A stretch of DNA of 64,000 nucleotides from Saccostrea cucullata. Lineage: Eukaryota. Location of the stretch: positions 248,001 through 312,000 of the forward strand of contig NW_026930562.1 in assembly GCF_032062105.1 (NCBI RefSeq), in the 5' to 3' direction. Below are positions 46,749-63,137 of this stretch, one piece after another. Position numbers and translations under genes: made by a program. Each line of letters opens with the position of its first letter. Position 1 is the stretch's first letter. The notes beneath the pieces are model-generated. The model worked only from the letters and a program-made list of their open reading frames with translations. It was not told the DNA's origin and made no database searches.

Positions 46749-49651
46749 ATGCCAAAATCCTTTTTATTGACAAATCGGAGGTTTCTAATTGAAAAGAAGA
46801 AAAGCAAAGAATTATCTGCAGGTAATTACTTTCTATTGCTTATTTTTGCAAATGAGGATTAATTCTAAGAAATAAAATATCAGATCTCTTTATGAAAGAC
46901 AAATTTACCAATATGTAATATATTATTTCATTTTGTAAGTTCAGTATTTGTATTTCTGAGATGAATTGGCCACCAGAATCGTTAATTAAAGTATACTTAA
47001 GTGTGCCTGAAAGTAACTTATCCTTCCAGATACTTTTTGGGTCATGATTGCTTTATGTCAAATTGTAAGTTAATAGGGGGCTATTGTAAGTTTGTTATAT
47101 CAGCTGTTACAACAATTCCTCCTGGTAATTATTCTCTTGTCCATTAGGTTTTACAAGGACATGGCTTCATATATATTTATTTTTTTTTAAAGTATCTACT
47201 TTATGTAGACTTTGCAAAACAAATTCAAGTCATATTTTATATGTGAAGTGAAAAGCTGAAAGCTTTTCATATTTGCTAACAATATGTACATTTTCACTGG
47301 TGAATATATTTTTCTGTTTGCTGCATATGTTTATGATAAAGGAATTTATACAGAAGAGCAGACTGTCATATTTCAAAAGTTCTCAAACCTCTTAAAGTTA
47401 TGTGGTATAGAATATTACAAAGTCGTGTCCGCGCAGCGGGGAGCTCAGACGGCACCGCTCCGATCTATACCATGTATACCGCCTCATTTTGATTTCACGA
47501 TAATTACCCGAGTCTGCAAACTCATGCAGTGTAAATACTGGTCTTATGTTTTGCCGTGTGTCGTAATTTTATGGCTGACCCCTAGTGAGGCTGGAGGGCT
47601 CACAAGGTCATGAATCACCTGCAGTCTCATCGCCACTGCTGATGTGATTATATGGTATCTCTCGCCAAGTGAATCATCTGTAAATGTACAGCTGACAAAT
47701 GCCTTCTGACACCTCTCTGCATCGTTTGCACACTCATCATTGAACACCTGGTGTGTTTATGTATCCAGTAAATAGACCTATAATAAAGACACCTTTTCTG
47801 ACACCTCTGACAACTAGATCCCACCTGAGACACTACTTTTTGATATAGCTTCCGTAAAGAAGCATTGAGAAAAAAATTATTAATATTGAATTTCCTTTAT
47901 TTCTACTGTCGCCCGCATGTTAGAGCGTCTGTGCCATAGTCACAGAGTAAGGAACTGATCCTTACGTCGCGGGATCACTATCGGACATTGGTGACCGGTT
48001 CTTCGTATGAGAACGTATTAACCAAAGTCCCATGCCGCATAAGGTGTTGGCACGAAAAAAGATTCTTCACTGCTCAATGATCCTTAATGCCGACTATATA
48101 GGTATAAATTTTCAGGCGTCTCCATATGAGTAAAAAAAATCTCAAGGAAACTGTTTAGACTGTCAAGATTTTTCTAAGCTCTTTAGATATATCGATGCCG
48201 TTTGATCAATTGATTTATTTTCAAATGCATTTATTAAAATTTCAGATACTAGTAACAAAAATGCAGAAATTAGGAAAGATGAAAGTCCTTTCGAAGCTGG
48301 AGAAACGCAGCAAAAGTGGGAAAACAATCCCGCCAAATCAAATCTGCAGCACAATTTAGAATTTGTGGACTATCGTCAGATATTTTACATCGAACACGAC
48401 AATAAATTACTCCCAAACAGAGACAATTTAAACGAAATAGACACCGATAATGACTCCCCGAAAGATTTGTCAACAAAAAGAAGAACTTCACCAATACGAT
48501 CATCTGATGCTGATCTCTCGAGACTCTACGAGAGCAACACTGTCTCTCGTAAAATTTCGAACGCTCCTACCCCACCTTTCGTCACGGGACCGCGCTCATC
48601 TTATTCGTACTTTCAGTTTCCGGATGACACTGGTGGATGTAGAGACTACTCAACTGAAGCAGTACCGGAAATGAAGCGGGCAACACAGACCCAATCACTG
48701 GTATCAGACCCCAGGACGGAAGTGGAAATGTCGCCGTATAACCGGTACTCCGACTTCAGTGCAGAGTTACGACCCGAATTTTCGCCCATAAATCGCTGTC
48801 ATGCGGAGTGCTCCGATCATTTTTCGCTTTTGTATGAGCTAATAAGAAACACTAATGGTCTTTTGGAGCATAGAGAACAAATGGATGCTCCAATAAATGC
48901 TAAAAGAGTACTTAATTTCGACAAACCGACTTACTCGCCCATTATCGAACCAATATCACCAAGACCAACATCTACAACAGAGCATGACGAATATAACAAT
49001 TACCCTTGCGAGGAGTGTGGCAAGCATTACAGCACTTCGAGTAACCTGGCCCGTCACAGACAAACACACAGATCGGCAAGCGACAAGAAAGCTCGAAAAT
49101 GTCCACACTGCGAAAAGGTGTACGTATCAATGCCAGCCTTCAGCATGCATGTCCGAACTCACAGTCAGGGGTGCGAGTGTCCATACTGTGGAAAAAGATT
49201 TAGCAGGCCCTGGCTACTACAGGTATTATATGGCATATAACTGTTTGTATTTAGGACAAATTAGATAAGGAGCAAAGTTCTCTTTAACATAAATTGATCG
49301 AATGTTTGGTAAATTAATGGAAATTTTATGGTATTTTAGGGTCATATAAGAACACATACTGGCGAAAAGCCCTTTGATTGTCCCAAGTGTGGAAAATGTT
49401 TTGCCGACAAGTCAAACCTCAGGGCGCATGTGCAGACTCATTCAACAGAAAAACCATACGTTTGTGGAAGGTGTGGCAAGGCGTTTGCTTTGAAGAGCTA
49501 CCTGTACAAGCATGAAGAATCCTCTTGTATGCGCGGTCAACGAAGTCGCTCTAAAGAAGAGAGGTCATCGGATGTGCGCGCGCACAAACACCGGAACAGA
49601 CAAAACTCAAATCAAGACTCATCACCAAGCATCCCAGAAAGCTTGGCATAG
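46749..49651 (+). CDS. scrt: Scratch-family (Snail superfamily) C2H2 zinc-finger transcriptional repressor, ScratchB/Kahuli-like, 453 aa
   Basis: Exons 46749-46821 (SNAG-like MPKSFLL), 48246-49222, 49340-49651; GT-AG, in phase, 1362 nt. Five fingers: [101 protein letters not shown]. Confidence 0.95.
47610..47830. promoter_or_regulatory. Candidate intronic enhancer: E-box and T-box-like site cluster in scratch intron 1
   Basis: CANNTG at 47616, 47666, 47675, 47689, 47696, 47745, 47822 (three CACCTG); TGACACCT at 47707 and 47799. Confidence 0.45.
47915..48155 (+). mobile_element. Decayed SINE-like remnant in scratch intron 1
   Basis: GGTGTTGGCACG...TCACTGCTCAATG...TCTCCATATGAGT tail shared with the insert at 44367; left boundary uncertain. 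Confidence 0.5.
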
Positions 49652-55480: not shown

Positions 55481-56822
55481 ATGAAAGCGATTCTGTTATT
55501 TCATTCCTCTCGTTTTTTATGTCTCCATAATCGAAGATTCGGAATTATATAATTAGTTTTATCCACTTATTTGTTTGTCTGTTTATAGTTTCTACGCAAA
55601 AAACTCTAATCTTGGCCTTAACTATAAAACGATAGTTGCTCGGACTATCATATTGCACCAAATTGATTCCTTTCTAACAAACCCTTCTTTGGGTATCAAC
55701 AATTATTGGAGTTTGGCCTACTTTTGTCAAACTTATATCTTGAAACAAAACCCTTTTACCGGTGCCCAAATTTCTTATTTTGGATTATGACATTTTTCAT
55801 TAACTTAGGCCCAGCGTTTGAATTGTTGCTACTAGTGCTTTCATTATGCATCCGTGTGCTCCTTGTTACAATACTTTTTTTGGATACAATCCTTTTAACT
55901 CTATGGCCTTGACTTTGGAATGTTGTCTATCTTTTCTTAATGTCATACGTTGGCATCAGTGTTTCACAATAAGATTATTTTTTTAACAAAAATATTCACA
56001 ATTCCAATTCAACATTCAGTCGATGTTATTTTCTTTTCAATGCATCAATTTATGTGTGTAACAAAATAATTCTTTGCTTATAAAATCAAAATAAAAACGT
56101 TGGAATTGTAAATTGACTGTAAAACATTTTCAGGAAAATAAAATAACGATAAAACATAAACTATCGCTGTTGAATTTATCAAAGCCTGGGTGATGTGTTA
56201 TATTTTCACATGTACTTTACAAATGGGCTAATTTGATAAGATAGCGCTGCCAATTGAAAACCTTATCAAGAGAATGACTAACACTGTTTTCCCTGATAAC
56301 GATGACTAAGATGTTTTGTCGGAGAAGGCAGGTTTCTCCAGACACCTTGTATCCCAGAGAAAATATTACAAATATCGTGGGGGTCGTGTATAAGATGAAT
56401 TATTGCTTTATGATACTTATATCAATAATTTTGAATAAAAAAAAAATGACACAGTGAAGTTCGGGTAAACTGAACAGCACGTCACTTCCGGTGACTTATT
56501 TATTTCATAATTACTATGACAACATAAGGCAAATTATGAAAATACTTTCAAACATATGTAAATGCATGTAAAACAAGCTATTAAAGCATACATCTTCACC
56601 TGATTTATTATAAAGGAAAATGATGTTTCAATAGTTTAATTAAGAATTGTGCTACATGTATTACCATTGATACATACATAATACAAGTAATTAAAAGTGT
56701 ATGTACATGCATTTAAATATCTTTTAATAACTGAAATTTTAAATGAACGTCATGAAAATAATAGATTTTAAATGTCTAATACTTTAGCACATCAAGAACT
56801 ATAAAGCAATTCTGAAAAGAAT

Positions 56823-59800
56823 TCAATGAAATATTTTGGAGTTATCGCGCTTCAAAAGCCCAACTCTCCTTTCATGTACCCTTAAAATCTTGTCTTCAGG
56901 TAACACATTGCAATCGATTAAAACCGTCACCAAATTAAACTTTACTCTGCATCTATTGAACAGCACTTGTTCAATATAGGAAGATAACATGGATGCATTC
57001 AGAGAAAATGTCTTAATTGGGTTCTCTGACAATTCTAAATATTCCAAATACGGAAAGTTAGAGAAATCTGTGGATTTCAGAGAAGAAATTCTGTTATGTT
57101 GTAGGTTTAAAACCCTGAGGTTGGACTTAGACTGGTTATGTATCACGCTCATCTCTTCTATAAAATTAAAAGCCATTTCAAGAGTTTGCAATGACTGAAG
57201 GTCTTTTATTCCTCTTGGATGTTGTAGTCTGTTGCTCGAGAGATCGAGATGCTTAAGCTTGGAAAACCGACTTAATGACGTCCAGTTCACTGATTGTAAT
57301 TGGTTGAAACTCAAGTCTATATATTCCAGATCCGTTTTGTTTGTGTTTTGCAGTAAATTGTCAATTTGTCCTTTTGTGTAATTCCTTATAACCATCTTCT
57401 GTACGGGCGATTGGGAGAGATTGGATAGACTTTTAGAAGGATGAACATCTGATGTGAGAGCAGACTTTCCTAGGAGACATACAAAACAAAGGATGCACAA
57501 CATCATAATGACAACGAGAAGGAGTGAAAGCAAATAATACACCACTGCCCTTGATTTCTCTGGCAAATAACTTAAGTCTTGACATCCACCATTAAAAGTC
57601 TCATTGGGATCTGCTTGCTTATAATCTTTCACTCTTGATGCTGATTTTTCGGTGGAATTCCCTGAGTCCTTTTTACTTTTCATACTCTCCATCCAATCCT
57701 GTTTTAGGAAACTATTTTCTTTCAGAGGTTCTCTTAGAGGAAGAGGCTTGTCAAACATCATCCCACCTTCAGAAAAAATGTTTTAATTAGTAAAAAAGGT
57801 AACCAAAACGTTCAAGTATACAAACCAATACTTCAAATATTTCATGAAATAATTAACATCAGGGATATAGGCTGTGTCGTTTAAATGTTAAATATTTACG
57901 AGTTTGGTGTTTCTCATCCGCTTTGGAATCTGTTGTGAATTCTGCATGGATTCGAAGTTCTCCGCTCACTCCCCCGATATCCTGTCCAGCTGCACCCGAT
58001 ACAATGGCAGACACCAAGTCTTTCTTTCTCTCAACAGATAAAGATTGCACCGTGTTGGCCGGAGAAAGGAACAACTCAATGTCTGTGATTATATTTTGAA
58101 AAGAGATTCAAAAGATTATATTAAAAATTCAAATCATACCAAATGTAAACAAAAAAGATTTAACAGTAAATTACAATACATACAGCTTTTGGCGGATCAT
58201 ATTATTGTCATTAAAATTCTTCATTCTTTTGAATTTGTTAAATTCATACTTGAAAATATTTGTTCTATACAAAAATGGTAAATATAATAATCCAATTTCT
58301 CGTTTTCTCTGTCTCATGGTTATCAGAATATCGTACGTACCACGTGTCTTTTGAAATCTTTCTACGTCATCAGAATCTCCCATAGCAATATCGATGCGGA
58401 AAGATATCGCAGATATATCTTCACTGGAAATTCCAGCGAAACCGAATAAAGCTACCAAGAATTGTTCCAAAAAGCAGGTATCTAACAGACGTCTGGTAGA
58501 GAAGTTTTTAATTCTGCGCAGCACTAGAACTATGCAGCCTTTTCTTTGAACCACGATCTCTACACCAAACTTGTCCTTTAGAACAGCGTTGACAGTCTGC
58601 AGCTTTTCCCCGGACAGCGACCGGAGGACCTGCTCTTCTATGTGGGCGACGTAGATTCCAGGGGAGGTTTCCATGTGGAGAATCATCTTAACAAGATCCT
58701 TGGATTCACAGCTGGTTTGGCCGTCTGCTTGTGTGTGATCGAAAACTTCAACATTCAAGACACAACTGTTATTGTTCCCGACTTGCACGATAACACCTTG
58801 TCCATGGTTTACAATACGAAGGTTGGAGGGACGCGTACCTGAAATAGAATTAAATAAAGATAGATATCTTTGTAATGTGTTTGTTTTCTGTTTCTCTTTT
58901 AAAATTTGAGTTACAGATATGTAAAATATTTTATCACTAAAAGAAATTAAAACAAGATGAGTTTGTAAAACACAGATGCCCCCGTATGGCATCATAGCGA
59001 AGGTTAAATTTTCTCAAATGCAAATCAAATGTGTTGTTACCCAAAGTAAGGCCTTCTCACAAGCCCTACCACCACTTGTTCAAATGTTTTGGCAATGTTA
59101 AAGTTTATTAAGGTATGTCAAACTCAAGGCCAAGGCCGAAGGGTCACAGCTGTTAGTTTTTAAGAAAAAGTCTTGTCACAAGGATTAGATATGTGAATTA
59201 CAAGAGCCCTATAGTCTTAACCATTCAAAGGTCATGTCCAAGGTCAAAGTAATGTGAAGAAGATGGGTGGATAAGGCGGAAAGAATGCCTATGGCATCAG
59301 ATATTAAGAAATCACATTTGATATGTAAATTGAGTATTTAAATTTACCCCTCATTATTGAAATTTATGAAATTATTGAGAAGAAAACCTTTTCTGAGAGA
59401 AAATAAATCTCTTTAAAAAATTTCATATATAAAAAATATTAGATGGTATACGTGGGATTCGAACCCCAGCAATAAAATACCGATGTATTATTCTGCTTTG
59501 GGGCTAACGCGCTAACCACTATGCGATATGGCTCATGATGATTAGGGGCATTTCATTCATGTTTGTGATATGACCCTTAACTTAATGGACTTGAAGTATT
59601 TCTCGGAAAGATACGAATGTGTTGTCATAAAAGTGTACTTTTAAGAGTAAGTGGGTCTTCGCTCCATTTTTTTTGTAAACCAAAAAATATTTATCTTATC
59701 GCAAACTTTTAGGATTATCTTTAAAAACTAGAGGTACTGTGAGCGATGAGCTCACTAAATGATACCCCCCGCCTCCCATATGGTTATAACTGGTGAAAAA

Positions 59801-61589
59801 GTCCATGTTTTCCTGTGGCCGGGAAATTCAAAATATGTGTCAGATCAAAAAGTAAAATAGGAGGTGCACAATGGCAATATGTAATAAAGATTCTGTGAAA
59901 GTTTCATCAAATTTCATTCAGTGGTATTAGAGGAGTTGCGGATAAGAGATGGGTACCCCAAAGCGTAACAGACGGACGGACGGACGGAATTAACGATTAC
60001 TATATACCCTCCCACTTTTCAAGCGGGGGGTATAAAAACTAGAGGTACTGTGAGCGATGAGCTCACTAAATGATACCCCCGCCTCCATATAGTTATAATG
60101 GCAAAGTCCATGTTTTGCTGTGGCCGTGAAACCCAAAATATGTGTAGGATCAGAGAGTAAAATAGGAGGTGCACAATGGCAATATGTAATAAAGAATCTA
60201 TGAAAGTTTCATCAAATTTCATTCAGTGGTATGAGAGGAGTTGCGGATAAGAGATGGGTACCCCAAAGCGTAACAGACGGACGGAAGGACGGACGGACGG
60301 AATTAACGATTACTATATACCCTCCCGCTTTTCAAGCGGGGGGTATAAAAATGGAGCGAAGACCCACTCATATTGAAAAAGTTTGTCAAAGTATATGAAA
60401 AAATGATCGTTTTTGTTCTTTTTAGTCTGTGTATGCTTTTTCGTTGGCGAATATTTTCTGTCTTTGTGAGATTTTTGTAAATTATAGAGATTTTACATTA
60501 AGTATACTTTAATATTAGGTGAAATATGAAATAAAATTTGGATATAATTGAGATTGAATTTTCACTTCTTATCTGTCCCGCTATAGGCATTCTGCCCGCC
60601 TTATCCCCCCATCTTCTTTTGTAAAAGTGGGTCGAAGTCCAAGGTCAAGAGTTCAAATTTGGTGGTACCTAAAGAATGGTCTTGGCACAAGGAATACACC
60701 TGTGAAATATAAAAGTCATATGCAGAGCCCCATCCATTCAAAAGTAATGAGCAAATTTAAAGTTTTCGTGGACAGATAGACAGATGGACATGCAGGTAAA
60801 GCAAAAACTGTGTATCCCCAAATCTTCGATTACGGTGGCATAAAAAAGAATCATTGAACCATGCAATATAAAAAAGTTTCATGAACATAAAGGACTTATT
60901 CTAAAAATATAGTGGAATTTTTCAAGCAATAAGGAAGTTTTTCTTTTTTTAATTGTTTATTTTATTCATTAGAATTTCTTCCTCTTTTTACTTCCTGTGT
61001 TATCCATCAAACAATCATCCCACAAAAATTAAGCAATTAAAGATCAAAAATGAAATCTACCTTTTCCACCCAAATCCCGATTGATTGATTCCTGAAAACC
61101 TTTTCCAAAAGCAAAAAGGTTTACAAGGTTATCCCCGATGTCCGTGAGTGTCCCCACACATCTATTATACAGCTCATCCGACACTGTAAACGATCTGTTG
61201 ACCACATTCCACACTGACATCAAAGTCTCTATATTTTCTCCCACGTGCTCCTGTTCAAACTGTCCAGAGAGACAATTTCCACACCAAGAACAATCAGGTT
61301 GTCTTATTGCTGTGAATCTTTTTAACAATTCAAACAGCTGATCCAACTCCAGGTTACAAAATGTGTTTTCTGTGTCAAGTGAGATTAACGATTCTTGTTC
61401 TTCTTGAGGAAGACTGGAGAAATACTCGGACTGAATGACCGCTCTGTATAAACGCTCAGGAGACGTATAAACCTCCAAAACTTCCTGAAAAAAGTCCCTT
61501 CCAGAGGAAAGGTAAAAATTTAACAGTCGTATTTTATTATCCACCATCCTTTTTCTCCTTAAGCGTTGTTTCTCCATTGTAGACGACAT
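56823..61589 (-). CDS. Predicted type II membrane protein: DZIP3-like HEPN domain - putative TRADD-N-like domain - TM - 5 LRRs, ~717 aa, 4 coding exons
   Basis: Exons (minus) 61589-61061, 58838-58341, 58082-57900, 57766-56823; all phase-1 GT-AG junctions, 2154 nt, joining four ORF-track ORFs in frame. TM AVVYYLLSLLLVVIMMLCILCFVCLL. LRRs LEYIDLSFNQL, LKHLDLSSNRL, LQTLEMAFNFI, LRVLNLQHNRI, LEYLELSENPI. Alternative in-frame ATG at 61682. N-terminal domain names are by-eye calls. Confidence 0.8.
59444..59533 (-). other. tRNA-derived (pseudo-tRNA / Pol III promoter-like) segment inside the TIR element
   Basis: Minus strand has A-box-like CGCATAGTGGTTAG and B-box GGTTCGAATCC; acceptor and anticodon stems do not form well. 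Confidence 0.45.
59728..60350. mobile_element. Head-to-tail dimer of a 311-bp Helentron-like element
   Basis: Units start CTAGAGGTACTGTGAGCGATGAGCTCAC at 59728 and 60039; each has (GACG)n and a terminal hairpin TATACCCTCCC(A/G)CTTTTCAAGCGGGGGGTATA. Confidence 0.9.
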
Positions 61590-63137
61590 GGCGAGCAAAC
61601 AAATATACGCACATGTGCTCGTCCTTTTAAAGTACGGGTAAATACTTATTAAAAGCAACATCCATGCTATGGATTTCCCCATGTAGCTATTCTTAAATGT
61701 GACATGGTCATTTAATCTGATAAAACCAATTCAAAACAAAATTAACCAACCAGTGACAAGCAAAATCTTTCTAGAAAAAATCCCCGGTATATTTTTTTGC
61801 GGAAAGGACTTTAAGAGTTCGTTGTGATGAAATATCTCTGAATTGCACAAACGACCAACGCCTTTCTGAATAAAAGCATATAAAACACTTTAGACAGAAG
61901 ATGTCGAGATCTAGATATATGTATCATTTAATTGGGTAGCAAAACTTATTGTGTGAGGCATTTACATTTGGGATACTTCAGATGCTAGTAATATTGTTTG
62001 ATAAACAATGATACTTGAAAATCTTTAAGTGCTTTGTCGAACCTTTGTCGAGAAAACAAATCTGCTTAGTTAATAACAATAATACAGTTTCTACCTAAAG
62101 AGAAGAAAACACGAAAGACAGGTAAAAGTACATTTTTCTTTGTTAGAGTGAACATTGAATCATATTTTATCATTTACCACTTTCTCATCACTTTAATGTA
62201 TGTATTCTTCATTGGAATACATGTATGTCTTCGAAAACCTGAAGTAGATTAATAAAGGATTAGCAAAGGACTACTTCAGAGTCATCTAAGTATTCATTCT
62301 ATATATACATGTATATAGCATTGAAATATCAACTTTGTTCCATCTCACACAGGTAACAAGATATTTAAATTAAATATACTATACAGAGAAAAAAGTCAAT
62401 ATGCGTACATATATGATATGGCCTCAAAGACACCTTAGTTAAGGTCATCTTTAAAATATTGTTTGCCATTTCCCGACTGACTGCCTAAAAATGACTCGAC
62501 TCAAAACTTCTTTAACCTCCTGGAAACAAATATTTGTTTCCTTATTTTTTTTAGGGTTTTATCGTTCACGTACCTACTGACCTCAACAGTTTTACTGAGT
62601 CGGGAGAGGACAAACAAATTTTAGTTTCAAGATTGCCAGACGTTTTAAAAAAGAATTTTAGCTAAGTATTATTGCTCCCATCTCTGGTCTACGTTTCTTT
62701 ACTGGGCTCATATAAATTAAATTGTTCTTACATGTAACCGTTTGCTTCCAAACCCTGTACATTTCTTGATTCTACTGAAATTTTCTTATTCCAAAAAAAA
62801 ACTTTTATCAAATATCTTGTACCAGTATTTTACACTCTCTTGACCGCAAATTACAGACTGGAATGACTTTTGCAGTTTCAAAATAGAATTAACGAGACGA
62901 TGTTATGCCTCTAACTGTTTTCCTTATGAACTGTTTCTTTTCTTGATAAGGTAACACGGAATTGATAGCAAATTTATCCACTAAAATTTAATTTTATTTA
63001 AATTTAAAAAAAAATTATCCAAGATATTTGAAAATGAATATTTTATTATAAAAATTGTTTTGAATAAAAATTAAGCAAACTATTAATAATAAAGATTTCC
63101 TTGTTTGAAACTATTAGCAGTACCTTCACTTAAGTTA

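What the first reader, a model, noticed from the sequence alone, without database searches (positions are those of the whole stretch)
56823..61589. Candidate novel immune receptor: HEPN-like + TRADD-N-like cytoplasmic region fused to TM and C-terminal LRR ectodomain (inverted-TLR topology)
Seen: four separate ORFs splice with clean phase-1 GT-AG junctions into one ~717-aa frame with a single hydrophobic helix preceded by basic residues (EKSR). The helix is followed by five LRRs, and six N-X-S/T sequons (NLS, NYT, NKT, NWT, NQS, NAS) lie C-terminal to it. Knowledge: animal TLRs are type I (N-terminal LRR, C-terminal TIR); DZIP3-like HEPN domains are usually fused to intracellular NACHT, ankyrin or death-fold proteins. 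Inference: exon 1 follows the DZIP3-HEPN pattern (RLL..G.D.F, SPERL, LELDQLFELLKRF..I.QP..SW, VGENIETL...N, VSDELY). The protein would then be type II, with an extracellular or luminal LRR sensor coupled to a cytosolic HEPN-fold effector. I do not recognise this architecture as described.
Basis: partly seen in the sequence, partly recalled or inferred. Interest (0 to 1): 0.85.

Follow-up and report, generated by a model that had tools for sequence, protein, structure and literature searches.

The report
Oyster dead-HEPN, TRADD-N-like, membrane LRR protein
This is a real, transcribed rock-oyster gene for a single-pass membrane protein. It probably carries a catalytically dead HEPN domain and a TRADD-N-like adaptor domain inside the cell and a short leucine-rich-repeat sensor outside, an unusual but not unprecedented build among bivalve immune-type genes.

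Summary
Four minus-strand exons join through phase-1 GT-AG junctions, and all three junctions appear in RNA. The same model is already in NCBI as an uncharacterized Saccostrea cucullata protein (LOC134229108). A 729-aa S. echinata orthologue has the same build.

- **Exon 1** is a divergent DZIP3-type HEPN domain (hhalign 94.7%, E 5.6e-8). The catalytic Arg and His of the Rx4-6H motif are missing in both species, so it is unlikely to be an RNase effector.
- **Exon 2** belongs to a very narrow family with no Pfam hit. Its model has an RRM-like fold with kinked helices and a Gly-Cys/Ser turn between strands 2 and 3, which are TRADD-N hallmarks. Profile and PDB searches stay weak, so I rate this about 65% likely.
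- **Exon 4** has one strong membrane helix and five LRRs.

Type II topology is likely:
- The signal-peptide-like upstream start has no RNA cover and is not conserved.
- All six sequons after the helix are conserved, against one of five before it.
- The charge rule does not support type II.

Published relatives include HEPN+TRADD-N pairs and one GT4+TRADD-N+TM+LRR protein. This is therefore a new variant of a known kind. Function is untested. The scan noted other HEPN immune-type genes on other pieces of this genome, but not this one.

The parts
61061..61589 (-). Exon 1: start codon at 61589, 176 codons plus 1 base. Encodes the divergent DZIP3-type HEPN domain.
   Evidence: Sequence. RNA cover reaches about 61642. 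100% match to P0021. The S. echinata orthologue starts at the same Met.
61125..61496 (-). HEPN core (exon-1 residues 32-155) aligned to bona fide HEPN_DZIP3 exons of the same genome.
   Evidence: hhalign probability 94.7%, E 5.6e-8. Score 53 against shuffles 13 +/- 2.3, maximum 19.6. The templates are PF18738 at E 1e-15 to 1e-24. ESM features score 0.92.
61191..61232 (-). Degenerate active-site stretch. Trp stands where the catalytic Arg should be, and a 3-residue gap lies where His should be.
   Evidence: Alignment. The paralogues have IERIRLIRNxxxGH. The S. echinata orthologue also lacks both residues.
58839..61060 (-). Intron 1 (2222 nt), GT..AG, filled with high-copy repeats.
   Evidence: Joint seen in 3 contig sets and 11 raw reads. 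Summed depth is up to 1e5 over 59600-60800.
58341..58838 (-). Exon 2: 498 nt, phase 1 in and out. Encodes the TRADD-N-like domain.
   Evidence: Single copy in this genome. Only 7 representatives among 1.84 billion.
58357..58707 (-). RRM-like beta-alpha-beta-beta-alpha-beta core with two kinked helices (exon-2 residues 44-160).
   Evidence: AlphaFold2 model with 17-row alignment: pLDDT 76, pTM 0.74. Atlas fold match TM 0.58 to a mollusc HEPN_DZIP3+TRADD-like_N cluster.
58534..58539 (-). Gly-Cys in the strand 2 to strand 3 turn (Gly-Ser in the other family members). This is the 'uS' motif position of TRADD-N.
   Evidence: Gly is invariant and the next residue is Cys or Ser in A3. The turn lies between strands 92-98 and 102-108. 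The motif is defined in PMC8195603. It aligns with the GS of a true PF20694 exon.
57900..58082 (-). Exon 3: 183 nt, phase 1. A 60-residue linker module with no recognised family.
   Evidence: 72% identical to the orthologue, dN/dS 0.45.
56823..57766 (-). Exon 4: linker, membrane helix, LRR region and stop codon (56823-56825).
57471..57545 (-). Single transmembrane helix (25 hydrophobic residues).
   Evidence: Kyte-Doolittle peak 3.26, the only strong peak in the protein. Present in the orthologue.
56826..57470 (-). Region after the helix (215 residues), with six conserved N-X-S/T sequons and a conserved Cys pair near the C-terminus. Predicted to lie outside the cytosol.
   Evidence: Sequons conserved 6 of 6 against 1 of 5 before the helix. 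Nearest solved sequences are extracellular LRR ectodomains. dN/dS 0.29.
56979..57329 (-). Five leucine-rich repeats.
   Evidence: Pfam LRR_8 E 2.3e-18, LRR_4 E 1.2e-14.
61590..61682 (-). In-frame upstream ATG (61682) and 31-codon hydrophobic extension used by the NCBI model. Probably not translated.
   Evidence: Zero RNA depth over 61659-61800 in four runs. In S. echinata the matching ATG runs into a stop after 24 codons, and the stretch has indels.

Best explanation
**What it is.** A real, expressed, single-copy gene found, as far as the databases show, only in Saccostrea rock oysters. It encodes a single-pass membrane protein of about 717 residues, most likely type II.

**Predicted layout.**
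- Cytosolic side: a DZIP3-type HEPN domain that has lost its RNase residues, followed by a TRADD-N-like RRM-fold adaptor domain and a poorly conserved linker.
- One membrane helix.
- Outside the cell or in an organelle lumen: a short, glycosylated five-repeat LRR domain.

**Inferred mechanism.** The LRR domain binds a ligand and clusters the protein. The TRADD-N-like domain then recruits a partner through its exposed sheet and G-C/S turn, as TRADD-N recruits the MATH domain of TRAF2. The dead HEPN domain would serve as a dimerisation, RNA-binding or regulatory module rather than as a nuclease.

**Shown:** gene structure, transcription, HEPN homology, loss of the catalytic residues, the LRRs, the helix, and purifying selection on all modules.

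**Inferred:** TRADD-N membership, topology, ligand sensing, partner recruitment and any role in immunity.
For: - **Gene model.** GT-AG phase-1 junctions. All three joints are in RNA, and one contig spans exons 3-2-1. The NCBI model is identical. The 729-aa S. echinata orthologue has the same order of parts.
- **HEPN.** More than 60 weak hits in this genome all fall on one family. The six of the eleven aligned exons that were scanned are all PF18738. hhalign gives 94.7%, E 5.6e-8, about 18 sd above shuffles. ESM features agree at 0.92.
- **Dead site.** Trp replaces Arg and His is deleted, in both species. In a pearl oyster, 194 of 202 such domains keep the motif (PMC9646362).
- **TRADD-N-like.** The model has pLDDT 76 with an RRM-like core and kinked helices. 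Gly is invariant and followed by Cys or Ser in the strand 2-3 turn, the family hallmark. Atlas fold matches reach TM 0.58 and 0.44/0.54. ESM features score 0.85 with 190-195 shared. The score against a true PF20694 exon is 25 versus shuffles 12.9 +/- 2.0, with the turn in register.
- **Topology.** The upstream ATG has no RNA cover and its frame is not conserved. Sequon conservation is 6/6 after the helix and 1/5 before it. The nearest solved LRRs are ectodomains. By established knowledge, a 477-residue folded N-terminus without a signal peptide is not translocated.
- **Constraint.** dN/dS is 0.24, 0.21 and 0.29 for the HEPN, TRADD-N-like and LRR parts.
Against: - Pfam's own HEPN_DZIP3 and TRADD-N models do not hit exons 1 or 2, even at E 1 to 10.
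- The exon-2 profile shows no similarity to the DEDD-clade TRADD-like_N profile (probability 0.2%).
- The flank charges around the helix slightly favour the opposite orientation.
- There is no Cys-rich N-terminal LRR cap of the kind usual in ectodomains.
- The RNA runs differ from the window by 3-5% in the exons, so they come from another strain or a very close relative. Missing 5' cover is therefore not absolute proof.
- No SignalP or DeepTMHMM run was possible.
- There is no functional or induction data.
Confidence: 0.55

Rival explanations
1. Type I topology. Translation starts at the upstream ATG (61682), as in the NCBI model. The 31-residue hydrophobic extension acts as a cleaved signal peptide. 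The HEPN and exon-2 domains would then be outside the cell and the LRRs in the cytosol.
For: The NCBI model P0021 begins at that ATG. The extension has a short basic start and a 12-residue hydrophobic core (read directly from the sequence). The flank after the helix is slightly more basic than the one before it.
Against: RNA depth is zero over 61659-61800 in all four runs, although the neighbouring bin is covered. In S. echinata the equivalent frame stops after 24 codons and carries indels, and that species' model starts at the downstream Met. Sequons are conserved only after the helix. HEPN_DZIP3 and TRADD-N domains are known only from cytosolic contexts (PMC8195603).
Confidence: 0.1
2. Exon 2 is not a TRADD-N domain. 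It is a lineage-specific RRM/ferredoxin-like domain of another origin, and the Gly-Cys/Ser turn is coincidental. The protein would then be a dead-HEPN plus unknown-domain membrane LRR protein with no TRAF-type signalling.
Against: The best Atlas fold matches are mollusc HEPN_DZIP3+TRADD-like_N proteins and a TRADD-like_N cluster. The turn motif sits exactly where the family definition puts it, including the known Ser-to-Cys substitution. There is an above-shuffle profile link to a true PF20694 exon. The HEPN-then-TRADD-N order is a known pairing.
Confidence: 0.3
3. The protein is not a pathogen sensor. It could be a decoy or negative regulator that pairs with active HEPN paralogues through its dead HEPN domain. 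Alternatively, it could be an adhesion or developmental LRR protein that merely reuses immune-type modules.
For: The catalytic residues are lost but the domain is under purifying selection (dN/dS 0.24), as expected for a non-enzymatic role. The LRR part is also constrained (0.29) rather than diversifying. The gene is single copy and not expanded.
Against: Nothing tested here speaks directly against this. The companion domains are otherwise found in immune and apoptosis contexts (PMC8195603, PMC9646362).
Confidence: 0.25

Closest known systems
GT4-GTase+TRADDN-DEDD2+TM+LRRs protein of Saccoglossus kowalevskii (XP_006823290.1), listed in Kaur et al. 2021, eLife, Figure 4 source data
   Same: The order of parts is the same: an N-terminal effector-type domain, then TRADD-N, a membrane helix and C-terminal LRRs.
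   Different: The N-terminal domain there is a GT4 glycosyltransferase, not a HEPN domain. Its TRADD-N is recognisable as DEDD2 clade, whereas ours is not. It comes from a hemichordate.
HEPN+TRADD-N pairs of cnidarians and molluscs (Kaur et al. 2021; ESM Atlas mollusc cluster with PF18738 and PF20694)
   Same: A DZIP3-type HEPN domain is followed directly by a TRADD-N-type domain.
   Different: Those proteins are soluble and are fused to macro/PARP, ankyrin or other modules. Their HEPN domains normally keep Rx4-6H. Here the motif is lost, and a membrane helix and LRRs follow.
Crassostrea virginica transmembrane TRADD-N expansion (Cys-rich ectodomain, TM, DED, NCOA6-clade TRADD-N, variable C-terminus)
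   Same: It is an oyster membrane receptor-type protein with a cytosolic TRADD-N domain, sometimes with a HEPN domain.
   Different: The orientation is opposite (type I, with an N-terminal ectodomain). A DED is present there and absent here. The ectodomain is Cys-rich rather than LRR.
Toll-like receptors
   Same: Both are single-pass membrane proteins with an exoplasmic LRR sensor. The nearest solved LRR sequences include TLR3 and TLR8.
   Different: There is no TIR domain. There are only five repeats. The LRR domain is C-terminal and has no conserved signal peptide. This protein is not a family member.
TRADD N-terminal domain bound to the TRAF2 MATH domain (PDB 1F3V)
   Same: The predicted RRM-like sandwich with kinked helices is shared, as is a small-residue plus Ser/Cys turn at the position of TRADD Ser67, which contacts TRAF2.
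   Different: There is no detectable sequence similarity, and the entry is not among the listed structural matches. Binding is untested.

Membership tests
HEPN_DZIP3 (PF18738) | Significant sequence or profile similarity to family members | tested here: met
   hhalign against 11 same-genome exons gives 94.7%, E 5.6e-8, about 18 sd above shuffles. Six of the 11 exons were scanned and all are PF18738. The Pfam HMM itself gives no hit at E 1, so this is a divergent member.
HEPN_DZIP3 (PF18738) | Rx4-6H catalytic motif | tested here: not met
   Trp aligns with the Arg, and the His falls in a 3-residue gap. The S. echinata orthologue is the same.
HEPN_DZIP3 (PF18738) | All-helical HEPN fold | not tested
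TRADD-N (PF20694, PF13820, PF09034) | Match to a curated family model | tested here: not met
   No TRADD-N family appears for exon 2 or any of its 16 relatives at E up to 10.
TRADD-N (PF20694, PF13820, PF09034) | RRM-like two-layer sandwich with four antiparallel strands and two kinked helices | tested here: met
   In the AlphaFold2 model (pLDDT 76, pTM 0.74), the strands are 48-57, 92-98, 102-108 and 144-152. The helices are split at 73/76 and 118/120. This is a predicted model only.
TRADD-N (PF20694, PF13820, PF09034) | Tiny residue plus Ser (sometimes Cys) in the strand 2 to strand 3 turn | tested here: met
   The Gly is invariant. It is followed by Cys in Saccostrea and Ser in the other members. 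The definition comes from PMC8195603.
TRADD-N (PF20694, PF13820, PF09034) | Profile similarity to bona fide members | tested here: inconclusive
   The DEDD-clade profile gives 0.2%. One true PF20694 exon of this genome gives 8.6%, score 25 against shuffles 12.9 +/- 2.0, maximum 20.7.
TRADD-N (PF20694, PF13820, PF09034) | Structural match to TRADD-N models or structures | tested here: inconclusive
TRADD-N (PF20694, PF13820, PF09034) | Binding to a MATH domain partner | not testable with these tools
No complex job was run.
Leucine-rich repeat proteins | Tandem LxxLxLxxN repeats matching curated models | tested here: met
   LRR_8 E 2.3e-18 and LRR_4 E 1.2e-14, with five repeats.
Toll-like receptors | Cytosolic TIR domain | tested here: not met
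   No TIR hit appears in any exon or in the full database proteins.
Type II (N-in, C-out) single-pass membrane proteins | One membrane helix and no cleaved signal peptide | tested here: inconclusive
   There is one strong helix. The signal-peptide-like extension lacks RNA cover and is not conserved. No signal-peptide predictor was available.
Type II (N-in, C-out) single-pass membrane proteins | More positive charge on the N-terminal flank | tested here: not met
   The N flank is net 0. The C flank is net +1 (S. cucullata) and +2 (S. echinata).
Type II (N-in, C-out) single-pass membrane proteins | Signs of exoplasmic exposure of the C-terminal part | tested here: met
   Six of 6 sequons are conserved after the helix against 1 of 5 before it. 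There is a conserved Cys pair near the C-terminus. The nearest solved LRRs are ectodomains. This is supportive, not proof.

The most novel reading that the evidence does not exclude
Saccostrea oysters may have a type II 'inside-out' pattern-recognition receptor. A C-terminal exoplasmic LRR sensor would signal through a cytosolic TRADD-N-type adaptor to TRAF proteins. A catalytically dead HEPN domain would act as the assembly or regulatory module. This would be a receptor class with neither a TIR nor a Death domain.
Probability: 0.25. Interest if true: 0.7.

Novelty: new variant of a known kind. Interest (0 to 1): 0.42.

Why it matters
Bivalves carry very large, fast-changing sets of HEPN, TRADD-N, NACHT and Death-fold genes, and almost none has been tested. 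This gene is a compact, single-copy, intact and expressed example. It joins an outside sensor directly to two of these inside modules, and it has a clean orthologue pair for comparison.

It offers a tractable test of two questions:
- Do invertebrate TRADD-N-type domains really recruit TRAF proteins?
- What does a HEPN domain do once it has lost its nuclease residues?

It also shows that Pfam misses both inside domains. Counts of such architectures in oyster genomes are therefore likely to be underestimates.

Tried and rejected
- **Pfam scans.** Exons 1, 2 and 3 gave no relevant hit. Scanning all 17 exon-2 family members also gave nothing.
- **Paralogues in this genome.** Exon 2 (single sequence and profile) and exon 4 each found only themselves.
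- **Bridging search.** I looked for exon-2-like exons within 10 kb downstream of 20 canonical HEPN_DZIP3 exons. None was found, so those genes do not link the families.
- **Context of distant family members.** Logan and ENA contigs carrying distant exon-2 relatives held no other exon of this gene. The build of the wider family stays unknown.
- **Profile against PDB sequences.** Only noise was returned.
- **Fold searches against the PDB.** Foldseek, VIA second look and VIA wide gave only generic ferredoxin-like folds.
- **hhalign against the DEDD-clade TRADD-like_N profile.** No similarity.
- **Single-sequence fold of exon 2.** The model was unusable at pLDDT 41.
- **Joining the exons.** Whole-protein work used the database proteins P0021 and P0001 returned by the tools. 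In scripts, the exons were translated and analysed separately.


Full report
**1. The observation**

Each intron begins GT and ends AG. All junctions are phase 1, and the coding length is 2154 nt (717 codons plus stop).

I laid four public runs on 56700-61800. All three joints are present in contigs of three runs and in raw oligo-dT reads of a fourth: 4, 3 and 11 reads from several start points. One 1199-nt contig from a run recorded as RNA covers exon 3, exon 2 and exon 1 in one piece. The one- to three-base offsets reported at two joints come from SNPs next to the cut, not from different splice sites.

The runs differ from the window by about 3-5% in the exons, so they come from another strain or a very close relative. 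Intron 1 is full of very high-copy repeats.

**2. The gene is already modelled**

A search of 1.84 billion representatives with exon 2 found a 729-aa protein of Saccostrea echinata, LOC133204991, with exon 2 at residues 178-343.

A further search found a 748-aa protein of Saccostrea cucullata, LOC134229108. It is 100% identical to the window's exons 1 and 4 and to exon 2 over the residues aligned, and it uses the same junctions. So the window is S. cucullata or indistinguishable from it. Both proteins are named 'uncharacterized', and only LRR families are recorded for them.

Whole-protein analyses used these two database proteins.

**3. Exon 1 is a divergent, catalytically dead DZIP3-type HEPN domain**

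- Pfam gives no hit.
- In the oyster's own genome, exon 1 has more than 60 weak matches. All cover residues about 35-130 in open frames of about 220 residues.
- Six of these frames, when scanned, are clear HEPN_DZIP3 (E 1e-15 to 1e-24).
- Exon 1 against an alignment of eleven of them gives hhalign probability 94.7%, E 5.6e-8. The score is 53 against 13 +/- 2.3 (maximum 19.6) for 60 shuffles and 15 for the reversed sequence.
- Language-model features also point to mollusc HEPN_DZIP3 clusters (0.92, 184-187 shared features).

The paralogues carry the usual IERIRLIRNxxxGH. In exon 1 a Trp stands at the Arg position, and the His falls in a three-residue gap. The S. echinata orthologue is the same.

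In the pearl oyster, 194 of 202 such domains keep the motif (PMC9646362), so the loss here is unusual. The domain is nevertheless constrained (dN/dS 0.24 between the two species). That fits a retained non-enzymatic role.

**4. Exon 2 is probably a TRADD-N-type domain, but this is not proven**

The family is tiny. There are seven representatives in 1.84 billion. A profile search found sixteen in 5.8 billion, all short exon-like products from read assemblies without names or Pfam hits. Exon 2 is single copy in this genome.

With a 17-row alignment, AlphaFold2 gives pLDDT 76 and pTM 0.74. The model has a beta-alpha-beta-beta-alpha-beta core over residues 44-160. Both helices are broken in two, and a less confident N-terminal hairpin precedes the core.

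Kaur et al. 2021 define TRADD-N by three features:
- an RRM-like sandwich;
- kinked helices;
- a tiny-residue plus Ser motif, sometimes Cys, in the strand 2 to strand 3 turn, which contacts TRAF2 in PDB 1F3V.

The exon-2 family has an invariant Gly in that turn. It is followed by Cys in Saccostrea and Ser elsewhere.

Further support:
- The best Atlas fold matches are mollusc proteins carrying HEPN_DZIP3 plus TRADD-like_N (TM 0.58 and 0.51) and a TRADD-like_N cluster (0.44/0.54).
- Language-model features give TRADD-like_N clusters at 0.85 with 190-195 shared features.
- A true PF20694 exon of this genome aligns to the family profile with score 25 against 12.9 +/- 2.0 for shuffles, with the GS turn over the GC turn.

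Against:
- There is no Pfam hit for any member.
- There is no similarity to the DEDD-clade profile.
- PDB searches give only generic ferredoxin-like matches.

I put TRADD-N-type membership at about 65%.

**5. Exon 4 and topology**

There is one strong hydrophobic helix (Kyte-Doolittle 3.26) and no other. Five LRRs follow (LRR_8 E 2.3e-18).

The flank before the helix is net 0, and the flank after it is net +1 here and +2 in the orthologue.

The NCBI model starts 31 codons upstream at 61682, with a stretch that looks like a signal peptide. If that stretch were real, the protein would be type I, with the orientation reversed. Two results speak against it:
- No run gives any depth over 61659-61800, although the next bin is covered and contigs end at 61618 and 61642.
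- In S. echinata the matching ATG runs into a stop after 24 codons and the stretch carries indels. The sequence from the downstream Met onward is conserved.

Other evidence for type II:
- Without a signal peptide, a folded 477-residue N-terminus stays in the cytosol (established knowledge of signal-anchor proteins).
- All six sequons after the helix are conserved between the species, against one of five before it. My hand calculation gives a Fisher probability of about 0.015.
- A Cys pair near the C-terminus is conserved.
- The nearest solved LRR sequences are almost all ectodomains: LRRC32, IGFALS, LGR5, TLR3 and TLR8.

I put type II at about 70% and the type I rival at about 10%.

**6. Selection and copy number**

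dN/dS between the two species:

| Part | dN/dS |
|---|---|
| HEPN (exon 1) | 0.24 |
| Exon 2 | 0.21 |
| Exon 3 | 0.45 |
| Linker before the helix | 0.54 |
| LRR part | 0.29 |

The LRR part is not visibly diversifying. The gene is single copy in S. cucullata. S. echinata has a partial tandem copy upstream, with a broken exon 2.

**7. Comparison with what is known**

Kaur et al. 2021 (PMC8195603) describe large lineage-specific expansions of TRADD-N proteins in oysters and other sessile marine animals. Architectures differ even between close species. Examples include:
- HEPN-bearing forms;
- type I membrane forms in Crassostrea virginica;
- 41 'HEPN+TRADDN' entries in their table, with the examples shown from cnidarians;
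- X+TRADD-N+LRRs forms;
- one 'GT4-GTase+TRADDN-DEDD2+TM+LRRs' protein in Saccoglossus.

I found no HEPN+TRADD-N+TM+LRR entry, but the stored table is truncated. The present gene is therefore a new combination within a described theme, not a new kind of system. It is not a TLR, because it has no TIR domain.

**8. Mechanism**

The best-supported reading has three steps:
- an exoplasmic LRR sensor;
- a cytosolic TRADD-N-type adaptor that recruits a MATH/TRAF-type partner through its sheet and turn;
- a pseudo-HEPN domain used for assembly, RNA binding or regulation.

Only the parts list is shown. Every mechanistic step is inferred. A decoy or regulatory role is a serious alternative.

TRAF MATH exons exist in this genome, but they could not be fetched. 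The binding test was therefore left for later.

**9. Verdict**

This is a new variant of a known kind, of moderate interest.

Earlier notes of this scan record other HEPN immune-type genes on other pieces of this genome, and one HEPN-like/TRADD-N-like/ankyrin gene. None is this locus.

Noticed in passing
window 58923-60803 (intron 1): The intron is packed with very high-copy repeats. Summed RNA contig depth is hundreds to over 100,000, with many internal joints and strand switches, which suggests transcribed transposable elements.
   Followed up: no
L016 679-1176, 3945-4076, 4206-5168: The S. echinata locus holds a partial tandem copy about 5-9 kb upstream of the orthologue. It has an exon-2-like stretch (55% identical) broken by stops, an exon-3-like piece and an exon-4-like piece (64% identical). 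S. cucullata has no second copy.
   Followed up: partly
window 61191-61330 (exon 1): A Cys-x-x-Cys-x-x-Cys stretch replaces the Gly-Trp-Gly-Gly of canonical HEPN_DZIP3 paralogues. It is conserved in S. echinata, along with a further upstream Cys. It could be a metal site or disulfides.
   Followed up: no
window 61612-61614: An out-of-frame ATG lies in the likely 5' UTR and opens a short upstream reading frame of about 26 codons. It is not conserved in S. echinata.
   Followed up: no
window 61690-61800 versus L016 9760-9885: Blocks of near-identical sequence lie upstream of the gene in both Saccostrea species. A conserved TTTAAAAGGACG element lies further downstream, near 61622-61634. These may be promoter elements.
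   Followed up: no
window 48365-49240 (+): A 291-codon open frame has C2H2 zinc fingers (Pfam E 2e-13). It is the only other long open frame in the window.
   Followed up: partly
window 58707-58836 (exon-2 residues 1-43): A conserved Gly/Asn-rich N-terminal stretch (four invariant residues across the family) precedes the RRM-like core. It is modelled with low confidence as a hairpin and is not part of the canonical TRADD-N description.
   Followed up: no
L039, L040, L041, L042: Exon-2-like exons (37-44% identical) occur on short contigs from unnamed read assemblies (ERR139135xx, ERR13913702, ERZ27292764). No other exon of this gene is nearby, so the wider family may sit in other architectures.
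   Followed up: partly
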